Below, one piece after another: positions 7,034-41,700 of a stretch of DNA of 64,000 nt. A program made the position numbers and the translations under genes. The stretch comes from Pristiophorus japonicus (taxonomy: Eukaryota): NCBI RefSeq assembly GCF_044704955.1, contig NC_091996.1, positions 97,960,001-98,024,000 of the forward strand. The letters are read 5' to 3'. The notes under the pieces were generated by a model. The model did no database searches and was not told the origin of the DNA. It saw nothing but the letters and a program-made list of their open reading frames with translations. The stretch's first letter is position 1; each line of letters begins with the position of its first letter.

Positions 7034-7182
7034 GAAGGGTGGGACCACACACAAGGGGGTCGACGTGGTTTGCAGGAACGGATCAACAGTTTACGCCCCC
7101 TTCAGCGGCAGGCTGATGAGACGGGCCACCCCCTATAGGGAAACAAACGCGATTAACAATGGAGTAAAGTTGGAAGGAGCAG
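7034..7182 (+). CDS. LECT2: LECT2 coding exon 3 ([49 protein letters not shown])
   Basis: Zn motif HKGVD; matches human [20 protein letters not shown]...NAINNGVRISG. Acceptor gtacag|, donor gcag|gtgag, 149 nt. Confidence 0.95.
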
Positions 7183-7452
7183 GTGAGAAGAGTTCATTCC
7201 ATTCAGTCCAATCTGCCAGCTCCTTGCTAACCTGTCTCCCCATTTCCCCACGAAATCATCAGGGAATTCAAATTCACAGCTGCACAAGGGTGGAGGGAGC
7301 AGAAGCACAAGAACGATGGGCCGAATGGCATGCTTTTGTCTTGTATCATTCTATAATTCAAATGGGAGCCCTCCCCCGGCACTGACTGATTCTCTGAGTC
7401 GCTGGGCTTCTTCACGTTTGGTAATTATCTCTCGCTGTTGAGTTTAGAGCGG

Positions 7453-21940: not shown

Positions 21941-22495
21941 TATGTGATGTAGGTTGGGGATATGGAACAGAGATATAGGGTGAGGATGTAGAGGTTGGAG
22001 GCAGGGTTGGAGAAGCTGAGAGAGGGGCACTGGGGTGAAGGGAATGAGAAGCTTTGAGGATGAGAAGCAGGATATAACATTCTTGTGCTGGGAGCAGGGA
22101 CCCAATGTGGTCAGCGATGGTGCAGTGTGAGACTGTGCGGGGCAGGAGAATTCTGGAGGAGCAAGAACTACAAGAACAAACTGTCGCTATGACCTGCCAC
22201 TAAAGGCCATGATCGTTGTGCAATTTGTCTCGGAACCCACAAGGAACTGAGTGAGGCTGAAAGTGGAATCCTGCACCGTGGTGACAGGGCTGAGAGACAA
22301 TGAGTCAGAATAAAACTTCCGCAGCATGCCCACAGCTGGAAAGGCGATTTGTGTCCAAGGGCATTTGTCTGGCTCGAGTTCCCAGCGGCAGCCGATTCTC
22401 CTGAGGGCGATGCATTAAAGGTTATTTAATTTGAGATATCAAAAGCCAAGAACCACCTTCAAGCCCAAGGTTATTCAACAGTGAGTGGCACAGAT

Positions 22496-22553
22496 ATGGA
22501 CATGAAGTTCTCCAGTATCATCCGGATCAGCATCTGTTGGTTATTAATGAAAG
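22496..22553 (+). CDS. leader exon of V-type IgSF gene (MDMKFSSIIRISICWLLMK, phase 1)
   Basis: ATG(s), hydrophobic stretch and donor aaag|gtatgt. Phase-1 join gives ...LLMKG-GSVRG-EVHQRP, a typical split signal peptide. Confidence 0.65.
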
Positions 22554-22632
22554 GTATGTTAGGGGCAAGGCAACACAGCAGATCCTCCTGCTGAACTTGT
22601 CTGTCTGTCAATACATCTATCTATCAACACAT

Positions 22633-23842
22633 TGGGTTCAAAATCCAGAGACTTGAAGCACAAAAATCGAGGCGAACACTCCCCGTGCAGTACTGAGGGA
22701 GCTCCGCACTGTCAGAGGGGCAGTGCTGAGGGAGCTCCGTACTGTTGGAGGGGCAATACTGAGGGAGCGCCGTACTGTCAGAGGGGCAGTGCTGAGGGAG
22801 CTCCGTACTGTTGGAGGGGCAATACTGAGGGAGCGCCGTACTGTCAGAGGGGCAGTACTGAGGGAGTGCCGCACTGTTGGAGGGGCAGTACTGAGGGAGC
22901 GCCGCACTGTCGGAGGGGCAGTACTGAGGGAGTGCCGCACTGTCGGAGGGGCAGTACTGAGGGAGCAATGTACTGTCGGAGGGGCAGTACTGAGGGAGCC
23001 CTGCACTGTCGGAGGGCCAGTACTGAGGGAGCGCTGTACTGTCGGAGGGGCAGTACTGAGGGAGCCCCGCACTGTCGGAGGGGCAGTACTGAGGGAGTAC
23101 CACACTGTCTGAGGGGCAGTGCTGAGGGAGCGCCGCACTGTCGGAGAGGCAGTGCTGAGGGAGCACTGTACTGACGGAGGGGCAGTCCTGAGGGAGTGCC
23201 GCACTGTTGGAGGGGCAGTACTGAGGGAGCACTGTACTGACGGAGGGGCAGTACTGAGGGAGTGCAGCACTGTCGGAGGGGCAGTACTGAGGGAGTGCCA
23301 CACTGTCGGAGGGCCAGTACTGAGGGAGCGCTGTACTGTCGGAGGGGCAGTACTGAGGGAGTACCACACTGTCGGAGGGGCAGTACTGAGGGAGCGCCGC
23401 ACTGTCGGAGGGGCAGTACTGAGGGAGTGCTGCACTGTCAGAGAGGCATTACAGAGGGAGTGCCGCACTGTCGGAGGGGCAGTATTGAGGGAGTGCTGCA
23501 CTGTCAGAGAGGCATTACAGAGGGAGTGCCGCACTGTCAGAGGGGCAGTACTGAGGGAGCCCCGCACTGTCGGAGGTGCCATGTTTTGGATGAGACGTTA
23601 AACTGAGGCCCCGTCTGCTCTCTCAGGTGGATGTAAAAGATCTTAGGGCACTATTTTGAAGGAGAGCAGGGGAGTTCTCCCCGGTGTCCTGGGGCCAATA
23701 TTTATCCCTCAATCAACATCACTAAAACAGATTATCTGGGTCATTATCACATTGCTGTGTGTGGGAGCTTGCTGAGCGTAAATTGGCGTTTCCCACATTA
23801 CAACAGCGACAGCAGTTCGAAAAATAACTTCATTGGCTGTCT
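22633..23842 (+). mobile_element. DeuSINE with ~27 copies of the 33-bp minisatellite (22686..23576)
   Basis: B-box remnant gggttcaaaatccagagacttg, then array, then SINE body ending acttcattggctgt. Confidence 0.88.
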
Positions 23843-23974
23843 TTTTATAGTGTGCTCGGGTCTCTTGAGTGGGACTGGAGAGCACGACTGTCTGGCTCAG
23901 GGGGCAGGTCCATGCTCCGCACCGAGCCAGGCCTGGCGCTCTGAGCTAACCCGGCGGCTGTATTTTGTTTGCAG

Positions 23975-24331
23975 GGGGCTCGGTACGAGGTGAGGTCCAC
24001 CAGCGGCCGGCCACACTCGAGGCCGAAGAAGGGGATTCCGTGGAGCTGAGCTGCCGCTTCGATGAGCCCGGGAGGGCACCGCAGCTGGTGAGTTTCCAGT
24101 GGGATCTGCCAGATGGTGAGCTGTACCAAATGGTGCCGGGCGACAGGGCTCTGGGTGGGTCGGGCCGGAGGGTGTCTCTTCACACTGACCTCGCGACGCG
24201 GAGCAGCGAGCTACGCATCAGCAACGTCACGACCAGCGACAGCGGCCACTACCTGTGCATCATCCAGCTCCTGGAGCCCCTGCCCATAATTCAGATGGAG
24301 GGGCGTGGGACCCAGCTCCGGATCATACCAG
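23975..24331 (+). CDS. Ig V-set domain exon with germline-joined J-like motif (CD28/CTLA4/NKp30-like single-V protein)
   Basis: Acceptor tattttgtttgcag|, donor ccag|gtacac, 357 nt, phase 1-1. B-strand VELSC, C-strand FQW, E-strand SELRISNV, F-strand DSGHYLC, G-strand GRGTQLRI. Confidence 0.9.
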
Positions 24332-24344
24332 GTACACCAATTCA

Positions 24345-24460
24345 AACCTTCTTTTATCTTCTCCTGCGGAAGGATATATTGGCCTTGGGTGTGCTGCATA
24401 AATTTACCAGAATTATTCCTGGACGCCGAGGGTTAAATTACTCGGAGAGGTTTCTCAAAT
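24345..24460 (+). mobile_element. old CR1 fragment (appears to continue at ~26353..26472)
   Basis: LRKDILAL...KFTRIIPG.RGLNYSER, a diverged CR1 ORF2. The downstream part ttcccgctggttgggg...tttggaactctct lies after the younger CR1. Confidence 0.6.
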
Positions 24461-26352
24461 TGTTGGCAACCAGTAACCAGTCGGGTGCCACAGGGATCAG
24501 TGCTGGGACCCCAACTATTTACAATCTATATTAATGACTTGGAAGAAGGGACTGAGTGTAACGTAGCCAAGTTTGCTGACGATACAAAGATGGGAGGAAA
24601 AGCAATGTGTGAGGAGGACACAAAAAATCTGCAAAAGGCTCAGTGAGTGGGCAAAAATTTGGCAGATGGAGTACAATGTTGGAAAGTGTGAGGTTGTGCA
24701 CCTTGGCAGAAAAAATCAAAGAGCAAGTTATTATTTAAATGGAGAAAGAGTGCAAAGTGCTGCAGTACAGCGGGACCTGGGGGTACTTGTGCATGAAACA
24801 CAAAAGGATAGTATGCAGGTACAGCAAGTGATCAGGAAGGCCAATGGTATCTTGGCCTTTATTGCAAAGGGGATGGAGTATAAAAGCAGGGAAGTCTTGC
24901 TACAGTTATACAGGGTATTGGTGAGGCCACACCTGGAGTACTGCGTGCAGTTTTGGTCTCCGTATTTACGAAAGGATAGAAACATAGAAACATAGAAACA
25001 TAGAAAATAGGTGCAGGAGTAGGCCATTCGGCCCTTCTAGCCTGCACCGCCATTCAATGAGTTCATGGCTGAACATTCAACTTCAGTACCCCATTCCTGC
25101 TTTCTCGCCATACCCCTTGATCCCCCTAGCAGTAAGGACCTCATCTAACTCCTTTTTGAATATATTTAGTGAATTGGCCTCAACAACTTTCTGTGGTAGA
25201 GAATTCCACAGGTTCACCACTCTCTGGGTGAAGAAGTTCCTCCGCATCTCGGTCCTAAATGGCTTACCCCTTATCCTTAGACTGTGACCCCTGGTTCTGG
25301 ACTTCCCCAACATTGGGAACATTCTTCCTGCATCTAACCTGTCTAACCCCGTCAGAATTTTATATGTTTCTATGAGGTCCCCTCTCATTCTTCTGAACTC
25401 CAGTGAATACAAGCCCAGTTGATCCAGTCTTTCTTGATAGGTCAGTCCCGCCATCCCGGGAATCAGTCTGGTGAACCTTCGCTGCACTCCCTCAATAGCA
25501 AGAATGTCCTTCCTCAGGTTAGGAGACCAAAACTGTACACAATACTCCAGGTGTGGCCTCACCAATGCCCTGTACAACTGTAGCAACACCTCCCTGCCCC
25601 TGTACTCAAATCCCCTCGCTATGAAGGCCAACATGCCATTTGCTTTCTTAACCGCCTGCTGCACCTGCATGCCAACCTTCAATGACTGATGTACCATGAC
25701 ACCCAGGTCTCTTTGCACCTCCCCTTTTCCTAATCTGTCACCATTCAGATAATAGTCTGTCTCTCTGTTTTTACCACCAAAGTGGATAACCTCACATTTA
25801 TCCACATTATACTTCATCTGCCATGCATTTGCCCATATACTTGCTTTGGAGGCAGTTCAGAGAAGGTTCACTCGGTTGATTCTGGGGATGAGGGAGTTGA
25901 CTTATGAGGAAAGGTTGAGGAGGTTGGGCCTCTACTCATTGGAATTCAGAAGAATGAGAGGTGATCTTATGGAAACGTATAAGATTATGAGGGGGCTCGA
26001 CAAGGTGGATGCAGAGAGGATGTTTCCACTGATGGGGGAGACTAGAACTAGGGGGCATGATCTTAGAATAAGGGGCCGCCCATTTAAAACTGAGATGAGG
26101 AGGAATTTCTTCTCTCTGAGGGTTGTAAATCTGTGGAATTCTCTGCCCCAGAGAGCTGTGGAGGCTGGGACATTGAATATATTTAAGGTGGAGATAGACA
26201 GATTTTTGAGCGATAAGGGAGTGAAGGGTTATGGGGAGCAGGCGGGGAAGTGGAGCTGAGTCCATGATCAGATCAGCCATGATCGTATTAAATGGCGGAG
26301 CAGGCTCAAGGGGCCGAATGGCTGACACCTGCTCCTATTTTTTATGTTCTTA
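24461..26352 (+). mobile_element. 5'-truncated CR1 LINE (same subfamily as 8617..9722), split by a nested CR1
   Basis: ORF2 breaks at ...WSPYLRKD (24978) and resumes at atatacttgctttggaggca (25835), ending KGVKGYGEQAGKWS* and a ttatgttctta tail. Confidence 0.92.
24979..25834 (-). mobile_element. nested CR1 LINE of a second subfamily
   Basis: Uninterrupted 244-aa ORF2 C-terminus (25083..25817) and (tttctatg)n tail at 24979-25005. Confidence 0.92.
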
Positions 26353-26530
26353 TTCCCGCTGGTTGGGGAATCCTGGACTAGGGGCACAGTCTAAACAGTA
26401 GAGCCAGACGTTTCAGGAGTGACATTCGGAAACACTTCTACACACAGGGTGGGAGAGGTTTGGAACTCTCTTCATTGTGAATTACTTTGTGAAAGGTGTT
26501 ATATAAAGGCAGGTTCTTCTTATTTCCCAG

Positions 26531-26584
26531 CTAAAGTGAAGCATGAAGGAACAAACGAGCCCCAAGTCATCACAGAGCTGTTCG
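26531..26584 (+). CDS. IgSF gene stalk micro-exon A ((A)KVKHEGTNEPQVITELF)
   Basis: Acceptor ttcttcttatttcccag|, donor ttcg|gtacgt, 54 nt, phase 1-1, open in frame with the V exon; paralogous to B and C. Confidence 0.7.
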
Positions 26585-26754
26585 GTACGTTCTTGTAGAA
26601 ACATCTCTGGGTAAAAAAATAACATTGAACCTTGTATAAGTTAAGGAAATAAAGATCATGAGATGGTCCTTGGATGATTAAAGGTATCCTTCCGTTGACA
26701 TAATAGCTCTCCCTTTGAAGGTAGTCGTCAGTGTTCAGACATCACACCAAACCA

Positions 26755-27305
26755 CGCTCTCTCGGGTGGACGCGAAAGATCCCACGGCACTATTTCGAAG
26801 AAGAGCAGGGGAGTTATCCCCGGTGTCCTGGGGCCAATATTTAACACTCAACCAACATCATCATCAGACGCAGTCCCTCGGGATCGAGGAAGACTTGCTT
26901 CCACTCAATGTGAGTCCTCAGGTGACTGAACAGTCCAATACGAGAACCACAGTCCCTGTCACAGGTGGGACAGACAGTGGTTGAGGGAAGGGGAGGGTGG
27001 GACTGGTTTGCCGCACACTCCTTTCGCTGCCTGCGCTTGGTTTCTGCATGCTCTCGGCGACGAGACTTGAGGTGCTCAGCGCCCTCCCGGATGCACTTCC
27101 TCCACTAAACCAACATCACTTTAAATAGTAAGATTATCTGGGTCATTAACACATTGCTGTGTGTGGGAGCTTGCTGTGCGCAAATTAACTGCCGTGTTTC
27201 CCACATTACAACAGTGACTACACTCCAAAAGTGCTTCATTGGCTGTGAAGCGCTTTGAGACGTCCTGAGGTCGTGAAAGGCGCTATATAAATGCAAGTTC
27301 CTTCT
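26755..27305 (+). mobile_element. DeuSINE body interrupted by an RTE insertion
   Basis: SINE body reads continuously if 26861..27118 is removed; ends gaaaggcgctatataaatgcaag. Confidence 0.8.
26861..27107 (-). mobile_element. 5'-truncated RTE LINE with 11-bp target-site duplication
   Basis: Reverse complement of RTE 3' end, flanked by aaccaacatca at 26850..26860 and 27108..27118. Confidence 0.85.
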
Positions 27306-28049
27306 TTCTTATTTCCTTAATGGCCCAGGAATCCACTTATCCCAGTTGGTCCGTGCCGACGGCTATCAAACGCCCGATGGGAGAGGAAATCACCATGGGG
27401 TGGGTGATAGCCTGTCGCGTGTGGCCCAGGAGAAGGTCCCTCCATTTCTGTGGCAAACCCACTTGGAAACAGCTTGGGTGCCCCCCCCAGGAGAGTGATT
27501 GCAGCAAGCCAAGAATAGGTATGGATAGTCAGGAGGGGCACGTGACAGGTAGCTGCCCCCCATCCCACCCTTCCAATGGCCCCTTTGGGAGGAGAGTGCA
27601 TTAAAGAGTAATTGTTTCATTAAGATAAGTTCCCTTTTTTTGTTCAGTCAGATCCCAGCCTTGACACGACAGTCCGCCCCCATCGCCACACATGAGCTAA
27701 GAGCACGAGAGCCCCTGGAAGGGCTGAAGAACTATGGCCTCTATTAAAATCATATAAGAGTCCAGTTAAGAATGAGGCCATTCAATTCATCGTGTCCATG
27801 CCAGCTCTTTGCTCGAGCAAACTAAACCCACTGCCCCGCAGTGAAACGGATAGTGACCCAAGTTTACCTCAGGATGCTGTTCACGGGAGAACGTGTCACA
27901 TTCCCACCATATTGTCCCATACCTCTTAAAGAGGTGAAGAGTAAAATATCACTGTGTCAATACATGCAGGCTAAAATGTTCAGTTGGATTTATTTGCAGA
28001 TGAAAGGTTATAAGGAGGTGAGACACCGAAACAAGTGCAATCATGGATG

Positions 28050-28450
28050 TTTGGCTCAGGGCCAGGATTTTTACATCTGAGTCAGAAGGTTGTGGGTTCA
28101 ATCCCCACTCCAGTGCTGATCTGAAGCAATGCTTCATTGTTAGAGCTGCCATCTTCCAGATGCGACATTAAACTGAGGTCCTATCTGCCTGTTCAGGTGG
28201 AAGTAAAGATTGTATTGCGCTACTTGGAAGAAGAGCACAGGCGGTCTCCCACTATCCTGGGCAATGTTCTGCCCTCAACCAACACCACTGATCGTCTGTC
28301 CCATGCGCTGATTGTGAGATCTTGCTGTGCGTAAAATGCTGGTCACGTTTCCATAGAGAGCAACTGTGAATGTATTTCAAGAGGAAGTCATGATGAATCG
28401 CTTTGGGGCAGTCTGAGGATGTGAAAGGTGCTATATAAAGGTAATGTCTT
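28050..28450 (+). mobile_element. older, near full-length DeuSINE
   Basis: tggctcag...gtcagaaggttgtgggttcaatccc head through gtgaaaggtgctatataaagg tail. Confidence 0.75.
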
Positions 28451-28466
28451 CCTTCTTATCTCCCAG

Positions 28467-28517
28467 GTGATGTGAAGCATCAAGGAACAAACAAGTTCAA
28501 AGTCGCAGATCTGTCTG
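28467..28517 (+). CDS. IgSF gene stalk micro-exon B ((G)DVKHQGTNKFKVADLS)
   Basis: Acceptor cttccttcttatctcccag|, donor tctg|gtaagt, 51 nt, phase 1-1. Confidence 0.72.
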
Positions 28518-28941
28518 GTAAGTCCTCATGACCACAACTTTGGGATCCTGTTCCAATCTCTCTCAGGGAGGGAGAGTTAATTCGGACCTATTGATTGACA
28601 CACCAATTGATTGATGGCCAAGGCCCACAGTGCCTGGACATTACAGTTCAGGCTTCTTCCAAGTTTTGCTCTTGAGTTCAAGTGTGATTGAGTCTCCCGC
28701 GAACTGAAACCTGTGTCCTTATTCACGGCCATGGAAGGCTGAGCGGACCCAGGTTTAACAATTCCGAATGCCGCTCACGGAAGGATATGTCGTATTCCCA
28801 CCACATTCTCCCATTGCCTTTAAGTGGCGGAGAATAACACATCACGGAGCCGATGTGTGCAGGCTAACACATTAGTTGGATTTATTTTCTGATGAAAAAT
28901 TACAAGGAAGCCAGATGGCAAAACAGCACAATCACGAAAGT

Positions 28942-29385
28942 TTGGCTCAGTGCTAGCATTTTTACGTCTTGAGTGGGAAGGTTGTGGGTTCAATCCTGAC
29001 TCCAGGATTTGAGCACAGTTACTAGGCTGATGCTCCAGTGCTGATCTAAAGCAATGCTCCATTGTCAGGGCTGCCGTCCTCCAGATACGACATTAAATTG
29101 AGGGGCTGTCTGCCTGTTCAGGTGGAAGTAAAAGTTTCTACTTGAAGAAGAGCACAGATGTTTTCCCACTGTCCTGGCCAACGTTCTGCCCTCCACCAGC
29201 AGCACAGAAAACAAACCAGGTTGATTCATCATCTATCTCCTGTGCTGATTGTGGGATCTTGCTGTGCATAAATTGGCTGTCACATTTGCACGAGTAACAA
29301 TTGTGAATGCCATTCAAGACGAAGTCATGGTGAATCGATTTGGGACATTCTGGGGAAGTGAAAGGCACTATATAAAGGCAATGAC
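28942..29385 (+). mobile_element. older, near full-length DeuSINE (paralog of 28050..28450 by local duplication)
   Basis: Shares derived sequence gtgctgatct(g/a)aagcaatgct and upstream unique flank with the 28050 copy. Confidence 0.75.
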
Positions 29386-29403
29386 ATCCTTCTTATGTCC
29401 CAG

Positions 29404-29457
29404 GTAATGTGAAATATCCAGACACAAATGAGTCTACGGTCATCAAAGTTCTGCCCA
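29404..29457 (+). CDS. IgSF gene stalk micro-exon C ((G)NVKYPDTNESTVIKVLP)
   Basis: Acceptor ccttcttatgtcccag|, donor ccca|gtaagt, 54 nt, phase 1-1; carries an N-E-S sequon. Confidence 0.72.
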
Positions 29458-29722: not shown

Positions 29723-32700
29723 CTAATCCCACTGCCCCGCTCTCTCCCCATAGTCCTGTATCAATCCCCAAACTAATCCCACTGCCCCGCTCTCCCACCA
29801 TAGTCCTGTATCAATCTCCAAACTAATCCCACTGCCCTGCTCTCTCCCCATAGTCCTGTATCAATCCCCAAACTAATCCCACAGCCCCGCTCTCCCCCCA
29901 TGGCCCTGTATCAATCTCCAAACTAATCCCACTGCCCTGCTCTCTCCCCATAGTCCTGTATCAATCCCCAAACTAATCCCACTGCCCCACTCTCTCCCCA
30001 TAGCCCTGTATCAATCCCAAATTAATCCCACAGACCCACACTCTCCCCATAGTCCTGTATCAATCCGCAAACTAATCCCACTGCTCCGCTCTCTCCCCAT
30101 AGTCCTGTATCAATGCCCAAACTAATCCCACTTCCCCGCTCTCTCCCCATAGTCCTGTATCAATCCCCAAACTAATCCCACTGCCCCGTTCTCTCCCCAT
30201 AGCCCTGTATCAATCCCCAAACTAATCCCACTGCCACACACTCTCCCGATAGCCCTGTTTCAATCCCCAAACTAATCCCACTGCCCTGCTCTCTCCCCAT
30301 AGCCCTGTATCAATCCCAAACTAATCCCACTGCCCCGCTCTCTCCCCATAGCCCTGAATCAACCCCAAACTAATCCCACTGCCCCGCTCTCCCACCATAG
30401 TCCTGTATCAATCTCCAAACTAATCCCACTGCCCTGCTCTCTCCCCATCGTCCTGTATCAATCCCCAAACTAATCCCACTGCCCCGCTCTCCCCCCATGG
30501 CCCTGTATCAATCTCCAAACTAATCCCACTGCCCTGCTCTCTCCCCATAGTCCTGTATCAATCCCCAAACTAATCCCACTGCCCCACTCTCTCCCCATAG
30601 CCCTGTATCAATCCCAAATTAATCCCACAGACCCACACTCTCCCCATAGTCCTGTATCAATCCGCAAACTAATCCCACTGCTCCGCTCTCTCCCCATAGT
30701 CCTTTATCAATGCCCAAACTAATCCCACTTCCCCGCTCTCTCCCCATAGTCCTGTATCAATCCCCAAACTAATCCCACTGCCCCGTTCTCTCCCCATAGC
30801 CCTGTATCAATCCCCAAACTAATCCCACTGCCACACACTCTCCCGATAGCCCTGTTTCAATCCCCAAACTAATCCCACTGCCCTGCTCTCTCCCCATAGC
30901 CCTGTATCAATCCCAAACTAATCCCACTGCCCCGCTCTCTCCCCATAGCCCTGAATCAACCCCAAACTAATCCCACTGCCCCGCTCTCTCCCCATAGCCC
31001 TGTATCAATCCCCAAACTAATCCCACTGCCCCGCTCTCTCCCCATAGCCTTGTATCAATCCCCAAACTAATCCCACTGCCCCGCTCTCTCCCCATAGTCC
31101 TGTATCAATCCCCAAACTAATCCCACTGCCCCGCTCTCTCCCCATAGCCCTGTATCAATGCCAAACTAATCCCACTGCCCCGCTCTCTCCCCATAGCCCT
31201 GTATCAATCCCAAACTAATCCCACTGCCCCGCTCTCTCCCCATAGCACTGTATCAAACCCCAAACTAATCCCACTGCTCTGCTCTGTCCCCATAGCCCTG
31301 TATCAATCACCAAACTAATCCCACAGCCCCGCGCTCTCCCCATAACCCTGTATCAATCCCCAAACTAACCCCACTGCCCCGCTCTCTCCCCATAGCCCTG
31401 TATCAATCCCAAACTAATCTCACTGCCCCACTCTCTCCCCATAGCCCTGTAACAATCCCCAAACTAATCCCACTGCCCCACTCTCTCCCCATAGTCCTGT
31501 ATCAATCCCCAAACTAATCCCACAGCCCCAATCTCTCCCCATAGCCCTGTATCAATAACAAACTAATCCCACTGCCCCGCTCTCTCCCCACAGCCCTGTA
31601 CCAATCCCCAAACTAATCCCACTGCCCCACTCTCTCCCCATAGCACTGTATCAATCCCCAAACTAATCCCACTGCTCCGCTCTCCCCATAGCCCTGCATC
31701 AATCCCCAAACTAATCCTACTGCCCCGCTCTCTCCCCATAGCCCTGTATCAATCCCCAAACAAATCCCACTGCCCCACTCTCTACACATAGCCCTGTTTC
31801 AATTCCCAAACTAATCCCACTGCCCCGTTCTCTCCGCATACCCCTGTATCAATCGCCAAACTAATACCACTGCCGCGCTCTCTCCCCATAGTCCTGTATC
31901 AATCCCCAAACTAATCCCACTGCCCCACTCTCTCCCCATTGTCCTGTATCAATCCCCAAACTAATCCCACTGCCCCACTCTCTCCCCATAGCCCTGTATC
32001 AATCCCCAAACTAATCCCACTGCCCCGCTCTCTCCCCACAGCCCTGTATCAATCCCCAAACTAATCCCACTGCCCCGCTCTCTCCCCATAGTCCTGTATC
32101 AATCCCCAAACTAATCCCACTGCCCCGCTCTCTCCCCATAGCCCTGTCTCAATCACAAACTAATCCCACTGCCCCACTCTCTCCCCATAGTCCTGTATCA
32201 ATCCCCAAACTAATCCCACTGCCCCGCTCTCTCCCCAAAATCCTGTATCAATCCCCAAACTAATCCCACTGCCCCGCTCTCTCCCCATAGCCCTGTATCA
32301 ATCCCCAAACTAATCCCACTGCCCCGCTCTCGCCCCATACACCTGTATCAATCCCCAAACTAATCCCACTGCCCCGCTGTCTCCCCATAGCCCTGTATCA
32401 ATCTCAAACTAATCCCATTGCCCCGCTCTCTCCCCATAGTCCTGTATTAATCCCCAAACTAACCCCCTGCCCCGCTCTCTCCCCATAGCCCTGTATCAAT
32501 CCCAAATTTTTCCCACTGCCCCGCTCTCTCCACATAGCCCTGTATCAATCCCAAACGAATCCCACTACCTCGCTCTCTCCCCAGAGCCCTGTATCAATCC
32601 CAAACTAATCCCACTGCCCCGCTCTCTCCCCATAGTCCTGTATCAATCCCCAAACGAATCCCACTGCCCCGCTCTCTCCCCATAGTCCTGTCTCAATCCC

Positions 32701-35700
32701 AAACTAATCCCACTGCCCCACTCTCTCCCCATAGCCCTGTACCAATCCCCAAACTAATCCCACTGCCCCACTTTCTCTCCATAGTCCTGTATCAATCCCC
32801 AAACTAATCCCACGGCCCCACCTCTCCCCATAGCCCTGTATCAATCTCAAACTAATCCCACTGCCCCGCTCTCTCCCCATAGTCCTGTATCAATCCCCAA
32901 ACTAATCCCACTGCCCCGCTCTCTCCGCATAGACCTGTATCAATCCCAAACTAATCCCACTGCCCCACGCTCTCCCCATAGCCCTGTACCAATCCCAAAC
33001 TAATCCCACTGCCCCACTCTCTCCCCATAGCCTTGTATCAATCCCCAAAATAATCCCACTGCCCCGCTCTCTCCCCACAGCCCTGTATCAATCCCAAACT
33101 AATCCCACTACCCCACTCTCTCCCCATAGCCCTGTATCAAGCCCCAAACTAATCCCACTGCTCCGCTCTCTCCCCATAGCCCTGTATCAATGCCCAAACT
33201 AATCCCACTGCACCGCTCTCTCCCCATAGCCCTGTATCAATCCCCAAACTAATCCCACTACCGCGCTCTCTCCCCATAGTCCTGTATCAATCCCCAAACT
33301 AATCTTACTGCCCCGCTCTCTCCCCATAGTCCTGTATCAATCCCTAAACTAATCCCACTGCCCCGCTCTCTCCCCATAGCCCTGTATCAATCCACAAACT
33401 AATCCCACTGCCCCACACTCTCCCGATAGCCCTGTATCAATCCCGAAACTAATCCAACTGCCCCGCACTCTCCCCATAGCCCTGTATCAATCCCAAACTA
33501 ATCCCACTGCCCCGCTCTCTCCCCATACACCTGTATCAATCCACAAACTAATCCCACTGCCGCACTCTCTCCCCATAGCCCTGTATCAATCCCAAACTAA
33601 TCCCACTGCACCGCTCTCTCCCCATAGTCCTGTTTCAATTCCCAAACTAATCCCACTGCCCCGCTCTCTCCCCATAGCCCTGTATCAATCCCCAAACTAA
33701 TCCCACAGCCCCGCACTCTTCCCATAGCACTGTATCAATCCCCAAACTAATCCCACTGCTCCGCTCTCTCCGCATAGCCCTGTATCAATCCCAAACTATT
33801 CCCACTGCCCCACTCTCTCCCCATAGCCCTGTATCAATCCCAAACTAATCCCACTGCCCCACTCTCTGCCCATAGCCTTGTATCAATCCCCAAAATAATC
33901 CCACTGCCCCGCTCTCTCCCCATAGCCCTGTATCAATCCCAAACTAATCCCACTGCCCCACTCTCTCCCCATAGCCCTGTATCAATCCCCAAACTAATCC
34001 CACAGCCCCAATCTCTCCCCATAGCCCTGTATCAATCACAAACTAATCCCACTGCCCCGCTCTCTCCCCATAGCCCTGTACCAATCCCCAAACTAATCCC
34101 ACTGCCCCACTCTCTCCCCATAGTCCTGTATCAATCCCGAAACTAATCCCACAGCCCCAATATCTCCCCATAGCACTGTATCAATCACAAACTAATCCCA
34201 CTGCACCGCTCTCTCCCCATCGTTCTGTATAAATCCCCAAACTAATCCCACTGCCCCACTCTCTCCCCATAGCCCTGTATCAATCCCCAAACTAATCCCA
34301 CTGCCCCGCACTCTCCCCATAGCACTGTATCAATCCCCAAACTAATCCCACTGCCCCGCTCTCTCCCCATAGCCCTGTATCAATCCCCAAACTAATCCCA
34401 CTGCCCCGCTCTCCCCATAGCCCTGCATCAATCCCCAAACTAATCCCACTGCCCCGTTCTCTCCCCATAGCCCTGCATCAATCCCCAAACAAATCCCACT
34501 GCTCCGCTCTCTCCCCATAGCCCTGTATCAATCCCCAAACTAATCCCACTGCCCCGCTCTCTCCCCATAGTCCTGTATCAATCCCCAAACAAATCCCACT
34601 GCCCCGCTCTCTCCCCATAGCCCTGTATCAATCCCCAAACTAATCCCACTGCCCCGCTCTCCCCATAGCCCTGCATCAATCCCCAAACTAATCCCACTGC
34701 CCCGTTCTCTCCCCATAGCCCTGTATCAATCCCCAAACTAATCCCACTGCCCCGCTGTCTCCCCATAGCCCTGTATCAATCTCAAACTAATCCCACTGCC
34801 CCGCTCTCTCCCCATATTCCTGTATCAATCCCCAAACTAATCCCACTGCCCCGCTCTCTCCCCATAGCCCTGTATCAATCCCAAACTAATCCCACTGCCC
34901 CGCTCTCTCCACTTAGCCGTGTATCAATCCCAAACTAATCCCACTACCCCGCTCTCTCCCCATAGCCCTGTATCAATCCCAAACTAATCCCACTGCCCCG
35001 CTCTCTCCCCATAATCCTGCATCAATCCCCAAACAAATCCCACTTCCCCGCTCCCTCCCCATAGCCCTGTATAAATCCCAAACTAATCCCACTGCCCCAC
35101 TCTCTCCCCATAGCCCTGTACCAATCCCCAAACTAATCCCACTGCCCCACTTTCTCTCCATAGTCCTGTATCAATCCCCAAACTAATCCCATGGCCCCAC
35201 TCTCTCCCCATAGCCCTGTATCAATCCCAAACTAATCCCACTGCACCGCTCTCTCCCCATAGTCCTGTATCAATCCCCAAACTAATCCCACTGCCCCGCT
35301 CTCTCCGCATAGACCTGTATCAATCCCAAACTAATCTCACAGCCCCACTCTCTCCCCATAGCCCTGTATCAATCCCAAACTAATCCCACTGCCCCACTCT
35401 CTCCCCATAGCCTTGTATCAATCCCCAAAATAATCCCACTGCCCCGCTCTCTCCCCATAGTCCTGTATCAATCCCCAAACTAATCCCACTGCCCCGCTCT
35501 CTCCGCATAGTCCTGTATCAATCCCAAACTAATCCCACTGCCCCGCTCTCTCCCCATAGCCCTGTATCAAGCCCCAAACTAATCCCACTGCTCCGCTCTC
35601 TCCCCATAGCCCTGTATCAATCCCTAAACTAATCCCACTGCCCCGCTCTCTCCCCATAGCCCTGTATCAATCCCCAAACGAATCCCACTGCCGCGCTCTC

Positions 35701-38700
35701 TCCCAATAGTGCTGTATCAATCCCCAAACTAATCCTACTGCCCCGCTCTCTCCCCATAGTCCTGTATCAATCTCTAAACTAATCCCACTGCCCCGCTCTC
35801 TCCCCATAGCCCTGTATCAATCCCCAAACTAATCCCACTGCCCCACACTCTCCCGATAGCCCTGTATCAATCCCCAAACTAATCCCACTGCCCCGCACTC
35901 TCCCCATAGCCCGGTATCAATCCCAAACTAATCCCACTGCCCCGCTCTCTCCCCATAGTCCTGTATCAATCCCCAAACTAATCCCACGACCCCGCTCTCT
36001 CCCCATAGTCCTGTATCAATCCCCAAACTAATCCCACTGCCCCGCTCTCTCCCCATAGTCCTGTATCAATCCTAAACTAATCCCACTGCACCGCTCTCTC
36101 CCCATAGTCCTGTTTCAATTCCCAAACTAATCCCACTGCCCCGCTCTCTCCCCATAGCCCTGTATCAATCCCCAAACTAATCCCACTGCCCCGCACTCTT
36201 CCCATAGCACTGTATCAATCCACAAACTAATCCCACTGCCCCGCTCTCTCCGCATAGCACTGTATCAATCCCAAACTATTCCCACTGCCCCACTCTCTCC
36301 CCATAGCCCTGTATCAATCCCAAACTAATCCCACTGCCCCACTCTCTGCCCATAGCCTTGTATCAATCCCCAAAATAATCCCACAGCCCCATTCTCTCCC
36401 CATAGCCCTGTATCAATCACAAACTAATCCCACTGCCCCGCTCTCTCCCCATAGCCCTGTACCAATCCCCAAACTAATCCCACTGCCCCACTCTCTCCCC
36501 ATAGTCCTGTATCAATCCCCAAACTAATCCCACAGCCCCAATCTCTCCCCATAGCCCTGTATCAATCACAAACTAATCCCACTGCACCGCTCTCTCCCCA
36601 TAGTTCTGTATAAATTCCCAAACTAATCCCACTGCCCCACTCTCTCCCCATAGCCCTGTATCAATCCCCAAACTAATCCCACTGCCCCGCACTGTCCCCA
36701 TAGCACGGTATCAATCCCGAAACTAATCCCACTGCCCCGCTCTCCCCATAGCCCTGCATCAATCCCCAAACTAATCCCACTGCCCCCCGCTCTCCCCATA
36801 GCCCTGTATCAATCCCCAAACTAATCCCACTGCCCCGCTCTCCCCATAGCCCTGCATCAATCCCCAAACTAATCCCACTGCCCCGTTCTCTCCCCATAGC
36901 CCTGTATCAATCCCCAAACTAATCCCACTGCCCCGCTCTCTCCCCATAGCCCTGTATCAATCCCCAAACTAATCCCACTGCCCCGCTCTCTCCCCATAGT
37001 CCTGTATCAATACCCAAACAAATCCCACTGCTCTGCTCTGTCCCCATAGCCCTGTATCAATCCCCAAACTAATCCCACAGCCCCGCGCTCTCCCCATAAC
37101 CCTGTATCAATCCCCAAACTAACCCCTCTGCCCCGCTTTCTCCCCATAGCCCTGTATCAATCCCAAACTAATCTCACTGCCCCACTCTCTCCCCATAGCC
37201 CTGTACCAATCCCCAAACTAATCCCACTGCCCCACTCTCTCCCCATAGTCCTGTATCAATCCCCAAACTAATCCCACAGCCCCAATCTCTCCCCATAGCC
37301 CTGTATCAATAACAAACTAATCCCACTGCCGCGCTCTCTCCCCATAGCCCTGTACCAATCCCCAAACTAATCGCACTGCCCCACTCTCTCCCCATAGTCC
37401 TGTATCAATCCCCAAACTAATCCCACAGCCCCAATCTCTCCCCATAGCCCTGTATCAATCACAAACTAATCCCACTGCTCCGCTCTCTCCCCATAGTCCT
37501 GTATCAATGCCCAAACTAATCCCACTTCCCCGCTCTCTCCCCATAGTCCTGTATCAATCCCCAAACTAATCCCACTGCCCCGTTCTCTCCCCATAGCCCT
37601 GTATCAATCCCCAAACTAATCCCACTGCCACACACTCTCCCGATAGCCCTGTTTCAATCCCCAAACTAATCCCACTGCCCTGCTCTCTCCCCATAGCCCT
37701 GTATCAATCCCAAACTAATCCCACTGCCCCGCTCTCTCCCCATAGCCCTGAATCAACCCCAAACTAATCCCACTGCCCCGCTCTCCCACCATAGTCCTGT
37801 ATCAATCTCCAAACTAATCCCACTGCCCTGCTCTCTCTCCATAGTCCTGTATCAATCCCCAAACTAATCCCACTGCCCCGCTCTCCCCCCATGGCCCTGT
37901 ATCAATCTCCAAACTAATCCCACTGCCCTGCTCTCTCCCCATAGTCCTGTATCAATCCCCAAACTAATCCCACTGCCCCACTCTCTCCCCATAGCCCTGT
38001 ATCAATCCCAAATTAATCCCACAGACCCACACTCTCCCCATAGTCCTGTATCAATCCGCAAACTAATCCCACTGCTCCGCTCTCTCCCCATAGTCCTGTA
38101 TCAATGCCCAAACTAATCCCACTTCCCCGCTCTCTCCCCATAGTCCTGTATCAATCCCCAAACTAATCCCACTGCCCCATTCTCTCCCCATAGCCCTGTA
38201 TCAATCCCCAAACTAATCCCACTGCCACACACTCTCCCGATAGCCCTGTTTCAATCCCCAAACTAATCCCACTGCCCTGCTCTCTCCCCAGAGCCCTGTA
38301 TCAATCCCAAACTAATCCCACTGCCCCGCTCTCTCCCCATAGCCCTGAATCAACCCCAAACTAATCCCACTGCCCCGCTCTCTCCCCATAGCCCTGTATC
38401 AATCCCCAAACTAATCCCACTGCCCCGCTCTCTCCCCATAGCCCTGTATCAATCCCCAAACTAATCCCACTGCCCCGCTCTCTCCCCATAGTTCTGTATC
38501 AATCCCCAAACTAATCCCACTGCCCCGCTCTCTCCCCATAGCCCTGTATCAATAACAAACTAATCCCACTGCCCCGCTCTCTCCCCACAGCCCTGTACCA
38601 ATCCCCAAACTAATCCCACTGCCCCACTCTCTCCCCATAGCACTGTATCAATCCCCAAACTAATCCCACTGCCCCGCTCTCCCCATAGCCCTGCATCAAT

Positions 38701-41700
38701 CCCCAAACTAATCCTACTGCCCCGCTCTCTCCCCATAGCCCTGTATCAATCCCCAAACAAATCCCACTGCCCCACTCTCTACACATAGCCCTGTTTCAAT
38801 TCCCAAACTAATCCCACTGCCCCATTCTCTCCGCATACCCCTGTATCAATCGCCAAACTAATACCACTGCCGCGCTCTCTCCCCATAGTCCTGTATCAAT
38901 CCCCAAACTAATCCCACTGCCCCACTCTCTCCCCATTGTCCTGTATCAATCCCCAAACTAATCCCACTGCCCCACTCTCTCCCCATAGCCCTGTATCAAT
39001 CCCCAAACTAATCCCACTGCCCCGCTCTCTCCCCACAGCCCTGTATCAATCCCCAAACTAATCCCACTGCCCCGCTCTCTCCCCATAGTCCTGTATCAAT
39101 CCCCAAACTAATCCCACTGCCCCGCTCTCTCCCCATAGCCCTGTCTCAATCACAAACTAATCCCACTGCCCCACTCTCTCCCCATAGTCCTGTATCAATC
39201 CCCAAACTAATCCCACTGCCCCGCTCTCTCCCCAAAATCCTGTATCAATCCCCAAACTAATCCCACTGCCCCGCTCTCTCCCCATAGCCCTGTATCAATC
39301 CCCAAACTAATCCCACTGCCCCGCTCTCGCCCCATACACCTGTATCAATCCCCAAACTAATCCCACTGCCCCGCTGTCTCCCCATAGCCCTGTATCAATC
39401 TCAAACTAATCCCATTGCCCCGCTCTCTCCCCATAGTCCTGTATTAATCCCCAAACTAACCCCCTGCCCCGCTCTCTCCCCATAGCCCTGTATCAATCCC
39501 AAATTTTTCCCACTGCCCCGCTCTCTCCACATAGCCCTGTATCAATCCCAAACTAATCCCACTACCTCGCTCTCTCCCCATAGCCCTGTATCAATCCCAA
39601 ACTAATCCCACTGCCCCGCTCTCTCCCCATAGTCCTGTATCAATCCCCAAACGAATCCCACTGCCCCGCTCTCTCCCCATAGTCCTGTCTCAATCCCAAA
39701 CTAATCCCACTGCCCCACTCTCTCCCCATAGCCCTGTACCAATCCCCAAACTAATCCCACTGCCCCACTTTCTCTCCATAGTCCTGTATCAATCCCCAAA
39801 CTAATCCCACGGCCCCACCTCTCCCCATAGCCCTGTATCAATCCCAAACTAATCCCACTGCCCCGCTCTCTCCCCATAGTCCTGTATCAATCCCCAAACT
39901 AATCCCACTGCCCCGCTCTCTCCGCATAGACCTGTATCAATCCCAAACTAATCCCACTGCCCCACTCTCTCCCCATAGCCCTGTACCAATCCCAAACTAA
40001 TCCCACTGCCCCACTCTCTCCCCATAGCCTTGTATCAATCCCCAAAATAATCCCACTGCCCCGCTCTCTCCCCACAGCCCTGTATCAATCCCAAACTAAT
40101 CCCACTACCCCACTCTCTCCCCATAGCCCTGTATCAAGCCCCAAACTAATCCCACTGCTCCGCTCTCTCCCCATAGCCCTGTATCAATGCCCAAACTAAT
40201 CCCACTGCACCGCTCTCTCCCCATAGCCCTGTATCAATCCCCAAACTAATCCCACTACCGCGCTCTCTCCCCATAGTCCTGTATCAATCCCCAAACTAAT
40301 CCTACTGCCCCGCTCTCTCCCCATAGTCCTGTATCAATCCCTAAACTAATCCCACTGCCCCGCTCTCTCCCCATAGCCCTGTATCAATCCCCAAACTAAT
40401 CCCACTGCCCCACACTCTCCCGATAGCCCTGTATCAATCCCCAAACTAATCCCACTGCCCCGCACTCTCCCCATAGCCCTGTATCAATCCCAAACTAATC
40501 CCACTGCCCCGCTCTCTCCCCATACACCTGTATCAATCCACAAACTAATCCCACTGCCGCACTCTCTCCCCATCGCCCTGTATCAATCCCAAACTAATCC
40601 CACTGCACCGCTCTCTCCCCATAGTCCTGTTTCAATTCCCAAACTAATCCCACTGCCCCGCTCTCTCCCCATAGCCCTGTATCAATCCCCAAACTAATCC
40701 CACAGCCCCGCACTCTTCCCATAGCACTGTATCAATCCCCAAACTAATCCCACTGCTCCGCTCTCTCCGCATAGCCCTGTATCAATCCCAAACTATTCCC
40801 ACTGCCCCACTCTCTCCCCATAGCCCTGTATCAATCCCAAACTAATCCCACTGCCCCACTCTCTGCCCATAGCCATGTATCAATCCCCAAAATAATCCCA
40901 CTGCCCCGCTCTCTCCCCATAGCCCTGTATCAATCCCAAACTAATCCCACTGCCCCACTCTCTCCCCATAGCCCTGTATCAATCCCCAAACTAATACCAC
41001 AGCGCCAATCTCTCCCCATAGCCCTGTATCAATCACAAACTAATCCCACTGCCCCGCTCTCTCCCCATAGCCCTGTACCAATCCCCAAACTAATCCCACT
41101 GCCCCACTCTCTCCCCATAGTCCTGTATCAATCCCGAAACTAATCCCACAGCCCCAATATCTCCCCATAGCCCTGTATCAATCCCCAAACTAATCCCACT
41201 GCCCCGCTCTCTCCCCATAGTCCTGTATCAATCCCCAAACAAATCCCACTGCCCCGCTCTCTCCCCATAGCCCTGTATCAATCCCCAAACTAATCCCACT
41301 GCCCCGCTCTCCCCATAGCCCTGCATCAATCCCCAAACTAATCCCACTGCCCCGTTCTCTCCCCATAGCCCTGTATCAATCCCCAAACTAATCCCACTGC
41401 CCCGCTGTCTCCCCATAGCCCTGTATCAATCTCAAACTAATCCCACTGCCCCGCTCTCTCCCCATATTCCTGTATCAATCCCCAAGCTAATCCCACTGCC
41501 CCGCTCTCTCCCCATAGCCCTGTATCAATCCCAAACTCATCCCACTGCCCCGCTCTCTCCACTTAGCCGTGTATCAATCCCAAACTAATCCCACTACCCC
41601 GCTCTCTCCCCATAGCCCTGTATCAATCCCAAACTAATCCCACTGCCCCGCTCTCTCCCCATAATCCTGTATCAATCCCCAAACAAATCCCACTTCCCCG

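What the first reader, a model, noticed from the sequence alone, without database searches (positions are those of the whole stretch)
22496..29457. Unnamed germline-joined V-J immunoglobulin-superfamily gene with CD28/CTLA4-like F-G loop geometry
Seen: five exons join in frame (all phase 1) to give leader, one V domain and a stalk. V and the J-like GxGT strand are in a single exon, with no recombination signal next to it. Established: CD28/CTLA4, PD-1 and NKp30 are single-exon V-J-type receptors discussed as relatives of the pre-RAG antigen-receptor ancestor. Seen: CIIQLLEPLPIIQMEGRGT aligns without gaps to human CTLA4 CKVELMYPPPYYLGIGNGT, with two prolines and GxGT in register but LEPLPI in place of MYPPPY. 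Inference: a divergent cartilaginous-fish CD28/NKp30-family receptor, possibly binding a B7-family ligand. I cannot assign an ortholog.
Basis: partly seen in the sequence, partly recalled or inferred. Interest (0 to 1): 0.8.

Follow-up and report, generated by a model that had tools for sequence, protein, structure and literature searches.

The report
Unnamed shark CTLA-4-like V receptor gene
The window holds the front part of a real shark gene for a small surface receptor whose sensing loop resembles that of the immune brake CTLA-4; sharks, rays and chimaeras all keep this gene, but it has no name and no known function.

Summary
Five phase-1 exons with AG/GT borders encode a leader, one VJ-type Ig V domain and three 16-17-codon stalk units. 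No exact RSS heptamer lies near the V exon.

The V exon falls in a well-supported clade with proteins of 16 chondrichthyan species, chimaera included. None carries a curated name. Full-length orthologues add a TM segment and a short tail with no conserved tyrosine motif. The window lacks these exons: a 50-bp satellite starts 266 bp after exon 5 and runs to the window end.

The CTLA-4-like F-G segment is real and a family trait. It aligns gaplessly, and CTLA-4 is the best full-span PDB match (E 0.011 alone, about 1e-6 as a 15-sequence profile). It is also the most conserved part of the domain.

CD28-family membership is unproven: the orthologues have no conserved tyrosine motif, the neighbour is LECT2, and amphibian relatives lean towards NKp30. 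No transcripts could be checked.

Verdict: a new, unnamed member of the CD28/CTLA-4/NKp30-type VJ receptors. Earlier scan notes cover this same stretch only, not other DNA.

The parts
22496..22553 (+). Exon 1: start codon and signal-peptide leader (19 codons plus 1 base, GT donor)
   Evidence: The leader resembles orthologue leaders, for example in Rhincodon and Heterodontus. tblastn with P0171 also matches 22435-22482 and 22499-22576.
23975..24331 (+). Exon 2: complete VJ-type Ig V domain (118 whole codons, 23977-24330), phase 1-1
   Evidence: Pfam V-set E 1e-10. tblastn E 3e-51 to Heptranchias P0171 at 64% identity. AlphaFold2 model has mean pLDDT 91.1. It sits in the orthologue clade with 97/96 support.
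24271..24312 (+). Codons for the FG loop and J-like bulge (L-E-P-L-P-I-I-Q-M-E-G-R-G-T, residues 99-112), the family signature
   Evidence: Gapless match to the CTLA-4 F-G segment. Most conserved segment among the 17 orthologues: 6 of 13 positions invariant in residues 99-111. The motif YxC-x6-PxP-x5-GxG is present in 35 of 176 fetched proteins.
26531..26584 (+). Exon 3: stalk cassette 1 (54 nt, phase 1-1)
   Evidence: tblastn to stalk repeats of P0171, P0003, P0154 and P0167. Alignment of the three cassettes.
28467..28517 (+). Exon 4: stalk cassette 2 (51 nt, phase 1-1)
   Evidence: 71% identity over 21 residues to a Heptranchias stalk repeat, E 0.003.
29404..29457 (+). Exon 5: stalk cassette 3 (54 nt, phase 1, GT donor). 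It is the last exon visible in the window and carries an N-E-S sequon.
   Evidence: tblastn to stalk repeats of P0003 and P0171.
29723..64000 (.). 50-bp satellite array (about 691 copies, 90% matches, strong C-over-G bias on the + strand, GC skew about -0.70). It starts 266 bp after exon 5 and runs to the window end. The TM and tail exons seen in orthologues are not in the window.
   Evidence: tblastn finds no match to the TM or tail parts of the orthologues.
7044..7184 (+). Context: LECT2 exon, the upstream neighbour on the same strand
   Evidence: phmmer to LECT2 structures 5b0h and 9non, E 1.9e-13. ORF. Matched by the LECT2-like N-terminus of the fused model P0013.

Best explanation
The stretch is the 5' part (leader, V domain, three stalk cassette exons) of this shark's copy of an unnamed gene. 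The gene is conserved as a single orthologue group in sharks, rays, skates and a chimaera.

Shown in orthologues: the full protein is a type I membrane protein. It has one germline-joined VJ-type Ig V domain, a stalk built from repeated 15-18-residue cassette units, a transmembrane segment with a conserved Cys and a G-L-G-x-S motif, and a short basic tail with no conserved tyrosine motif.

Shown: within the V domain, the FG loop (L-E-P-L-P-I, followed by GxGT) is the best conserved part. It has the length and proline/glycine register of the CTLA-4 MYPPPY-GxG segment.

Inferred: this rigid proline loop is the ligand-contact surface, as it is in CTLA-4 and CD28.

Inferred: stalk length is set by including or skipping cassette exons.

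Inferred: with no signalling motif of its own, the protein acts as a non-signalling binder (decoy or competitor), or it works with the ITIM/ITSM-bearing multi-V paralogues that share its loop. At least one such paralogue lies near LECT2 in another shark.

The TM and tail exons of this copy lie outside the window, beyond a satellite of 34 kb or more, or they are lost.
For: Exon model.

Orthologues: the full HMMER search gave 233 hits at E<=1e-3. The single-V hits at 47-63% identity come from Heterodontus, Cetorhinus, Scyliorhinus, Stegostoma, Narcine and Callorhinchus. The profile word search added Pristis, Mobula, Hemitrygon, Rhincodon, Hemiscyllium, Heptranchias, Carcharodon and S. canicula.

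Tree: the window V sits in a 17-row clade with 97/96 support, with the chimaera outermost and the batoids monophyletic.

A V-domain HMM separates three tiers: orthologues at 135-201 bits, loop-sharing relatives at 45-77 bits, and other V domains at 31 bits or less.

Architecture of the orthologues. Predicted isoforms differ by exactly one 18-residue cassette (Rhincodon) or carry an alternative TM-less end (Cetorhinus).

CTLA-4 likeness:
- With the 39-residue F-G segment alone, 18 of the 60 listed PDB rows are CTLA-4. They are the best full-span rows, gapless, E 0.011-0.14.
- With a 15-sequence profile of that segment, 18 of 60 rows are again CTLA-4, at E 9e-7 to 3.9e-5. Every row ranked above them matches only the DSGxYxC part.
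- The AlphaFold2 model has pLDDT 91. CTLA-4 is Foldseek rank 1 and takes 6 of the 42 printed rows.
- ESM Atlas for orthologue P0007: CTLA-4-like clusters at 0.97 and CD28 at 0.96 for the whole protein. For the V part alone: PD-1 at 0.94, CTLA-4 at 0.92, and the best structural TM of 0.85 to a CTLA-4-like cluster.

FG loop conservation: mean top-residue share 0.81, against 0.62-0.71 elsewhere in the domain.
Against: No transcript evidence was available. No RNA run was listed, so read laying could not be used. The orthologue proteins are database models whose support I could not see.

The window lacks the TM and tail exons. None of the 17 proteins found is from a sawshark, so this copy may be truncated or unannotated.

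The CTLA-4 signal rests on about 37 residues. The N-terminal 79 residues give nothing specific (best E 0.017, antibody light chains). Over the whole V domain, TCR alpha V (6e-8) and CD276 (5e-8) outscore CTLA-4 (1.3e-3). The Foldseek E-values for CTLA-4, VNAR, TCR and VH are practically tied.

A proline loop could be convergent. Ligand, cell type and the decoy or partner role are all inference.
Confidence: 0.7

Rival explanations
1. It is a divergent subtype of the already described shark NKp30 (NCR3) family, not a CD28/CTLA-4-type gene. The V domain would then bind a B7H6-like ligand.
For: The X. laevis relative P0060 shares the S-P-L-P-I loop, and its best PDB match is NKp30 (E 1.2e-4). Four NKp30 rows are in its top 12, though TCR alpha is tied at 1.3e-4.

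A gecko protein, P0114, matches NKp30 structures at E 8e-13, about level with pIgR at 7.6e-13. It nests beside the anuran relatives, and that group is sister to the shark clade with 90/89 support.

Recalled from the abstract of Kinlein et al. 2021 (only its reference entry was seen): sharks have eight highly divergent NCR3 subtypes. Other agents' notes report many NKp30-family genes in this genome (unchecked).
Against: NKp30 is absent from the best 60 PDB rows for the window V, for its F-G segment and for the family F-G profile. It is also absent from the 42 printed Foldseek rows and from both Atlas lists.

NKp30 needs a 3-residue gap in the FG loop to align with P0060.

The family HMM scores the gecko protein at only 30 bits, no better than unrelated V domains. 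Its branch is long (1.67), so its place in the tree is unsure.

Shark NCR3 genes are said to be MHC-linked (recalled). Here the neighbour is LECT2.
Confidence: 0.2
2. In this species the gene is a truncated or decaying copy. The satellite expansion after exon 5 has separated or removed the TM and tail exons, so the five exons no longer make a membrane receptor.
For: No TM or tail match anywhere in the 64 kb. The satellite begins 266 bp after exon 5 and fills the rest of the window. None of the 17 proteins found comes from a sawshark. Each cassette donor, if read through, meets a stop five codons on (read).
Against: All five exons are open and all eight internal splice sites are canonical. At each of the 24 positions invariant the window carries the residue shared by the 16 orthologues compared. 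Its branch length (0.25) is ordinary. The three cassettes correspond in order to the three of Heptranchias. Large introns are usual in shark genomes (general knowledge).
Confidence: 0.12
3. It belongs to a non-immune adhesion-type IgSF group (IGSF3/PTGFRN-like, turtle-like or PILR-like), as the automatic names of some relatives suggest.
For: Automatic names of relatives: 'immunoglobulin superfamily member 3-like' for the Mobula and Hemitrygon orthologues; 'prostaglandin F2 receptor negative regulator-like' for P0013; 'protein turtle homolog B-like' for P0017.
Against: These are pipeline names given to multi-V models. P0013 is a fusion with LECT2. The paralogues carry ITIM/ITSM-like tail motifs typical of immune receptors. 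No adhesion-family Pfam model is hit.
Confidence: 0.05

Closest known systems
CTLA-4 (CD152) and the chondrichthyan CD28/CTLA4-related genes of Quiniou et al. 2024 (PMC11599192; outline with abstract and sections 14-16 and 23 read)
   Same: Single-exon VJ-type V domain with leader and V in separate phase-1 exons. The F-G segment has the same length, with Pro at Cys+7 and Cys+9 and GxGT at Cys+15 to Cys+18. The paper reports P-[P/L]-P followed by GxG for the shark CD28/CTLA4-like genes. CTLA-4 is the best full-span PDB sequence match and Foldseek rank 1.
   Different: L-E-P-L-P-I replaces MYPPPY. Orthologue tails have no conserved Tyr motif, and no YxxxxT motif is conserved in the TM. The neighbour is LECT2, not the cd28/ctla4/icos cassette markers. 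The stalk is built from repeated cassette exons. Batoid orthologues carry 2-3 V domains. Outside the F-G segment there is no specific similarity.
NKp30 / NCR3
   Same: A non-rearranging VJ-type V domain on a stalk and TM. Amphibian loop-sharing relatives and a nested gecko protein have NKp30 as a top PDB match.
   Different: NKp30 appears in none of the lists for the window sequence or for the shark family. Its FG loop is 3 residues shorter in the printed alignment. No basic TM residue is conserved in the orthologues. Charged-TM signalling and MHC linkage of NCR3 are recalled, not tested here.
CD28H (TMIGD2) and CD28HL1-3, CD28X, PD-1 (Quiniou et al. 2024)
   Same: Single V domain plus TM, with a proline-bearing CDR3-like loop. 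Atlas features of the orthologue's V part put a PD-1 cluster first at 0.94.
   Different: The published motifs are YxC-polar-xxx-E-I-P for CD28H, HL1 and HL2, and YxC-x6-PPP for CD28X. Each has its own Tyr motif and synteny block (fsd1/stap2; man2b/kiaa0232; slbp/tacc3; prkab1b/pla2g1b; pudp/sts). Here Glu is at Cys+6 and P-L-P at +7 to +9, the orthologue tails have no conserved Tyr motif, and the neighbour is LECT2.
TCR alpha V-J domains
   Same: Best whole-domain sequence matches in the PDB, J strand included (E 6e-8; profile 5.6e-15).
   Different: No RSS, V and J in one exon, and no C domain. The PDB holds thousands of TCR and antibody chains, so a best-of-many score is expected.

Membership tests
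CD28 family sensu Quiniou et al. [quoted passage not shown] | One extracellular IgSF V domain followed by TM and cytoplasmic tail | tested here: inconclusive
   The window holds one V exon and no other Ig exon between leader and stalk. The TM and tail are not in the window. Shark and chimaera orthologues have a single V domain, but 5 batoid orthologues have 2-3 V domains.
CD28 family sensu Quiniou et al. 2024 | Conserved proline motif in the CDR3-like FG loop (MYPPPY; P-[P/L]-P plus GxG in chondrichthyan CD28/CTLA4 homologues) | tested here: met
   P-L-P at Cys+7 to +9 and G-x-G at Cys+15 to +17. The alignment to CTLA-4 is gapless. The motif is invariant in the 17 orthologues.
CD28 family sensu Quiniou et al. 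2024 | Conserved tyrosine-based signalling motif in the cytoplasmic tail | tested here: not met
   This cannot be tested in the window because the tail exon is absent. Of the 10 full-length orthologue tails aligned, one (S. torazame) has a Tyr in the tail, and no Tyr motif is conserved.
CD28 family sensu Quiniou et al. 2024 | Location in one of the published synteny blocks | tested here: not met
   The upstream neighbour on the same strand is LECT2. 'lect2' occurs 0 times in the paper's main text. The markers named there differ. Only 64 kb of context was available, and the paper's supplements were closed.
CD28 family sensu Quiniou et al. 2024 | Clusters with family members in a phylogeny | not tested
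No reference CD28-family sequences could be obtained. Indirect evidence: 0 of 12 family members hit Pfam V-set_2 (PF15910), the model the Atlas shows for its CD28 cluster.
NKp30 / NCR3 family | Non-rearranging VJ-type V domain encoded in one exon | tested here: met
NKp30 / NCR3 family | Specific sequence or structure similarity to NKp30 | tested here: inconclusive
   NKp30 is not in any list for the window or the shark family. It is the best PDB hit of the amphibian relative P0060, at E 1.2e-4 and tied with TCR alpha.
NKp30 / NCR3 family | MHC linkage in sharks (recalled from the abstract of Kinlein et al. 2021; the paper is not held) | not testable with these tools
Rearranging antigen-receptor V gene segments (Ig/TCR) | Recombination signal sequence after the V part, with J encoded separately | tested here: not met
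   No exact heptamer lies between 21110 and 27949. The GxGT strand lies inside the V exon.

The most novel reading that the evidence does not exclude
The LECT2-linked 'P-L-P loop' genes are an unrecognised lineage of the CD28/CTLA-4/NKp30 group, a tenth CD28-type member or the sister of NKp30, that predates the split between cartilaginous and bony vertebrates.

On this reading it has existed since then as a paired set. One member is Tyr-less and short-tailed, with an invariant ligand loop on a stalk whose length is tuned by splicing. Its partners are ITIM/ITSM-bearing multi-V proteins that share the same loop and a Y-A-E-I tail motif. The set would be kept in Chondrichthyes and amphibians and lost or unrecognisable in teleosts and mammals.
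Probability: 0.3. Interest if true: 0.7.

Novelty: new member of a known kind. Interest (0 to 1): 0.5.

Why it matters
A 2024 survey set the jawed-vertebrate CD28 family at nine members and described it as complete by motif and synteny (abstract and discussion read).

This orthologue group does not fit that picture, at least by the paper's main text. It spans chimaera to sharks and rays. Its CTLA-4-register proline loop is its most conserved segment. It sits next to LECT2 and has no conserved tyrosine motif.

If it is a real co-receptor lineage, it adds a non-signalling or partner-dependent member to the early co-stimulation toolkit. It would also offer a natural test of what the proline FG loop recognises in cartilaginous fish.

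The cassette-exon stalk gives a simple, testable example of receptor reach being set by alternative splicing.

Tried and rejected
Searches and analyses that gave nothing useful:
- The word search with the V exon alone found nothing, because only proteins of 65-206 aa were candidates.
- The word search with the Xenopus relative P0060 found only itself.
- The whole-domain profile against the PDB was swamped by TCR and antibody chains, with 8525 hits, and did not discriminate.
- The N-terminal 79 residues gave no specific hit.
- Pfam gives only generic Ig models.
- UrIg/UrIg2 (PMC12227049, outline with abstract and three passages read) was rejected as a relative. Those are V-C1-C2-C3 proteins.
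- An RSS-bearing V segment was rejected.

Paper searches:
- Six orthologue LOC identifiers: 0 papers.
- The loop motifs: 6 papers, none about this family.
- LECT2 with shark IgSF terms: no paper holding 'lect2'.
These searches do not cover supplements or subscription papers. I cannot exclude that the gene is listed in the supplementary data sheets of Quiniou et al. 2024, or that it is one of the eight shark NCR3 subtypes of Kinlein et al. 2021.

Unverified points:
- Other agents' notes call the genome the Japanese sawshark. I did not verify the species.
- Deep nodes of the tree are unreliable. It is midpoint-rooted, has long branches, and the outgroups fall among the shark ITIM paralogues.
- For the tree I chose 34 of the 176 fetched proteins, kept HMM envelopes of 96 residues or more (which dropped the 85-residue first envelope of P0110), and left out isoforms and the long multi-Ig hits.

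The spliced protein was never joined.


Full report
1. WHAT IS IN THE SEQUENCE

- E1 22496-22553: ATG, 19 codons plus one base, a hydrophobic leader.
- E2 23975-24331: 357 nt.
- E3 26531-26584.
- E4 28467-28517.
- E5 29404-29457.

All exons have AG acceptors and GT donors, and all borders are phase 1.

E2 is a full V-set domain (Pfam PF07686, E 1e-10, covering 108 of 109 profile positions). It has the canonical Cys, Trp and Tyr-x-Cys, and G-R-G-T lies in the same exon. No exact RSS heptamer lies within about 2.8 kb on either side of E2.

All searches used single exons.

2. THE GENE HAS ORTHOLOGUES

The word search with the V exon was blank because of its length window. I therefore used the full HMMER search, which gave 233 hits at E<=1e-3.

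The best single-V hits are 47-63% identical. They come from Heterodontus, Cetorhinus, Scyliorhinus, Stegostoma, Narcine and Callorhinchus. A profile word search added Pristis, Mobula, Hemitrygon, Rhincodon, Hemiscyllium, Heptranchias, Carcharodon and S. canicula.

All are named 'uncharacterized' or 'hypothetical', except two automatic 'immunoglobulin superfamily member 3-like' labels.

In a maximum-likelihood tree of 52 V domains, the window sequence sits in a 17-row clade with 97/96 support. Callorhinchus is outermost, the batoids are monophyletic (99/99), and Heptranchias (65% identity) and Heterodontus are nearest. This looks like one orthologue per species.

A V-domain HMM separates three tiers:
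- orthologues, 135-201 bits;
- loop-sharing relatives, 45-77 bits;
- other V domains, 31 bits or less.

3. WHAT THE WHOLE PROTEIN LOOKS LIKE, AND WHAT THE WINDOW LACKS

After the V domain, shark orthologues have two to six repeats of a 15-18-residue unit of the type G-N-V-x-H-x-G-T-N-E-S-K-V-x-x-D-L-S. Then comes a hydrophobic segment with a conserved Cys and G-L-G-(F/Y/D)-S. The tail is short and basic, with no conserved tyrosine.

The window's E3-E5 correspond in order to the three units of Heptranchias.

tblastn with ten relatives finds the leader region, the V exon and the three cassettes. It finds nothing for the TM or tail. A 50-bp satellite of about 691 copies starts 266 bp after E5 and fills the window to its end. 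The model is therefore a true 5' part, not a whole gene.

Predicted isoforms elsewhere differ in two ways. Rhincodon X1 and X2 differ by exactly one 18-residue cassette. Cetorhinus X2-X4 have an alternative TM-less end. This suggests cassette skipping and possibly secreted forms. These are database models, and I could not see their support.

4. THE CTLA-4-LIKE LOOP

With the 39 residues from the end of strand E to the end of strand G, CTLA-4 chains are the best matches that span the whole piece. They take 18 of the 60 listed rows, at E 0.011-0.14. The alignment is gapless, and the printed mouse alignment puts P-L-P over P-P-P and GRGT over GNGT.

With a profile of the same segment from 15 family members, the CTLA-4 rows improve to 9e-7 to 3.9e-5. 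They remain the best full-span matches. Every row ranked above them is a multi-Ig protein matching only the generic DSGxYxC part.

The AlphaFold2 model is confident (mean pLDDT 91.1). Foldseek ranks CTLA-4 first (E 4.8e-9, TM 0.70), and CTLA-4 takes 6 of the 42 printed rows. VNAR, TCR and VH domains are practically tied with it.

Language-model features of orthologue P0007 are nearest to clusters auto-named CTLA-4-like (0.97) and CD28 (0.96). For the V part alone, the nearest are PD-1 (0.94) and CTLA-4 (0.92). The best structural TM (0.85) is to a CTLA-4-like cluster. These are leads only.

Among the 17 orthologues, residues 99-111 are the most conserved segment. The mean top-residue share is 0.81 and 6 of 13 positions are invariant, against 0.62-0.71 elsewhere. 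That is unusual for a CDR3-like loop and argues for a fixed ligand contact. This last step is inference.

5. EVIDENCE AGAINST CD28-FAMILY MEMBERSHIP

Over the whole domain, TCR alpha V (6e-8) and CD276 (5e-8, summed over two weak domains) outscore CTLA-4 (1.3e-3). The N-terminal 79 residues match nothing specific.

Quiniou et al. 2024 define the family by domain structure, motifs and synteny (abstract and sections 14-16 and 23 read). The comparison gives:
- The proline-plus-GxG motif is met.
- The orthologue tails lack a conserved Tyr motif.
- The neighbour is LECT2 (E 1.9e-13 to LECT2 structures). LECT2 is absent from the paper's text.
- Batoid orthologues carry two or three V domains.
- 0 of 12 members hit Pfam V-set_2.

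The accession lists of that paper are in supplements that I could not open.

6. A WIDER LOOP-SHARING SET

The pattern YxC-x6-P-x-P-x5-GxG occurs in 35 of the 176 proteins fetched. These fall into four groups:
- the orthologues;
- shark and ray multi-V proteins with ITIM/ITSM-like tails (P0016, P0017, P0013, P0030);
- short-tailed amphibian proteins (Xenopus, Lithobates, Ranitomeya, Microcaecilia);
- caecilian and newt proteins with Y-A-E-I and I-x-Y-S-E-L tail motifs.

P0013 of Heterodontus is a fused model that begins with LECT2 and continues with three such V domains. It lies on the same contig as the Heterodontus orthologue. An earlier scan note reports a two-V gene 25.6 kb before this window (not checked here). 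LECT2 linkage of the cluster therefore seems to hold in at least two sharks.

7. THE NKp30 QUESTION

The best PDB match of the Xenopus relative is NKp30 (1.2e-4), tied with TCR alpha.

A gecko protein matches NKp30 structures at 8e-13, about level with pIgR at 7.6e-13. It nests beside the anuran group, which is sister to the shark clade with 90/89 support.

Against this, NKp30 appears in no list for the shark sequences. The gecko protein scores only 30 bits with the family HMM and sits on a long branch.

The paper on shark NCR3 subtypes is not held, so I could not compare with them.

8. VERDICT

This is the front part of a real, conserved, unnamed VJ-type receptor gene. Its binding loop is CTLA-4-like. 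Its closest named relatives lie in the CD28/CTLA-4/NKp30 group. Membership in any named family is not shown.

No transcripts could be checked: none was listed. Function is inferred only.

Noticed in passing
window 26480-26530, 28400-28466, 29340-29403; compare 27240-27310: The acceptor region of each stalk micro-exon (GTGAAAGG-(T/C)-(G/A)-CTATATAAAGG... then a pyrimidine tract and CAG) is the 3' tail of a shark SINE. The same tail ends an ordinary SINE copy at about 27100-27310 with no exon after it. The E4 and E5 cassettes align over about 500 bp upstream of the exon. So the stalk seems to have grown by duplication of a 'SINE plus micro-exon' unit.
   Followed up: partly
window 29723-64000: An uninterrupted 50-bp satellite, about 691 copies at 90% matches, with GC skew about -0.70 (C over G on the + strand). 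It fills more than half the window and sits where the next intron or exon of the receptor gene is expected.
   Followed up: partly
window 7026-7238 (+), ORF 7026-7385: A LECT2 exon (E 1.9e-13 to LECT2 crystal structures; weak Peptidase_M23 hit) on the same strand, about 15 kb upstream of the receptor gene. A Heterodontus database model fuses LECT2 to three loop-sharing V domains, which suggests the same neighbourhood there.
   Followed up: partly
window 2-182, 18089-19426, 22687-23576: A 33-bp minisatellite (GCACTGTCGGAGGGGCAGTACTGAGGGAGCGCC) occurs three times in the window. One array of 27 copies lies inside intron 1 of the receptor gene, directly followed by SINE-body-like sequence. It creates long spurious ORFs on both strands.
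   Followed up: no
window 24573-26259: Intron 2 holds reverse-transcriptase-like LINE fragments on the + strand (ORFs 24573-24995 and 25846-26259). They are interrupted by another such fragment on the - strand (ORF 25083-25817). A similar ORF lies at 8712-9284 (-).
   Followed up: no
proteins P0164, P0030, P0066 (Pristis pectinata LOC127586538, LOC127586539, LOC127586541); P0045, P0150, P0076 (Microcaecilia unicolor): In the sawfish, the orthologue, an ITIM-type paralogue and a PILR-like two-V gene have near-consecutive gene numbers on one 14.6-Mb contig. In a caecilian, a short-tailed and an ITIM-type loop-sharing gene share one 56.6-Mb contig. This hints at a conserved cluster of paired receptor types.
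   Followed up: no
window 13234-15623: A degenerate tandem array (31-bp unit nested in a 425-bp unit, 71-78% matches) rich in the word TGACATCACGG lies between LECT2 and the receptor gene.
   Followed up: no
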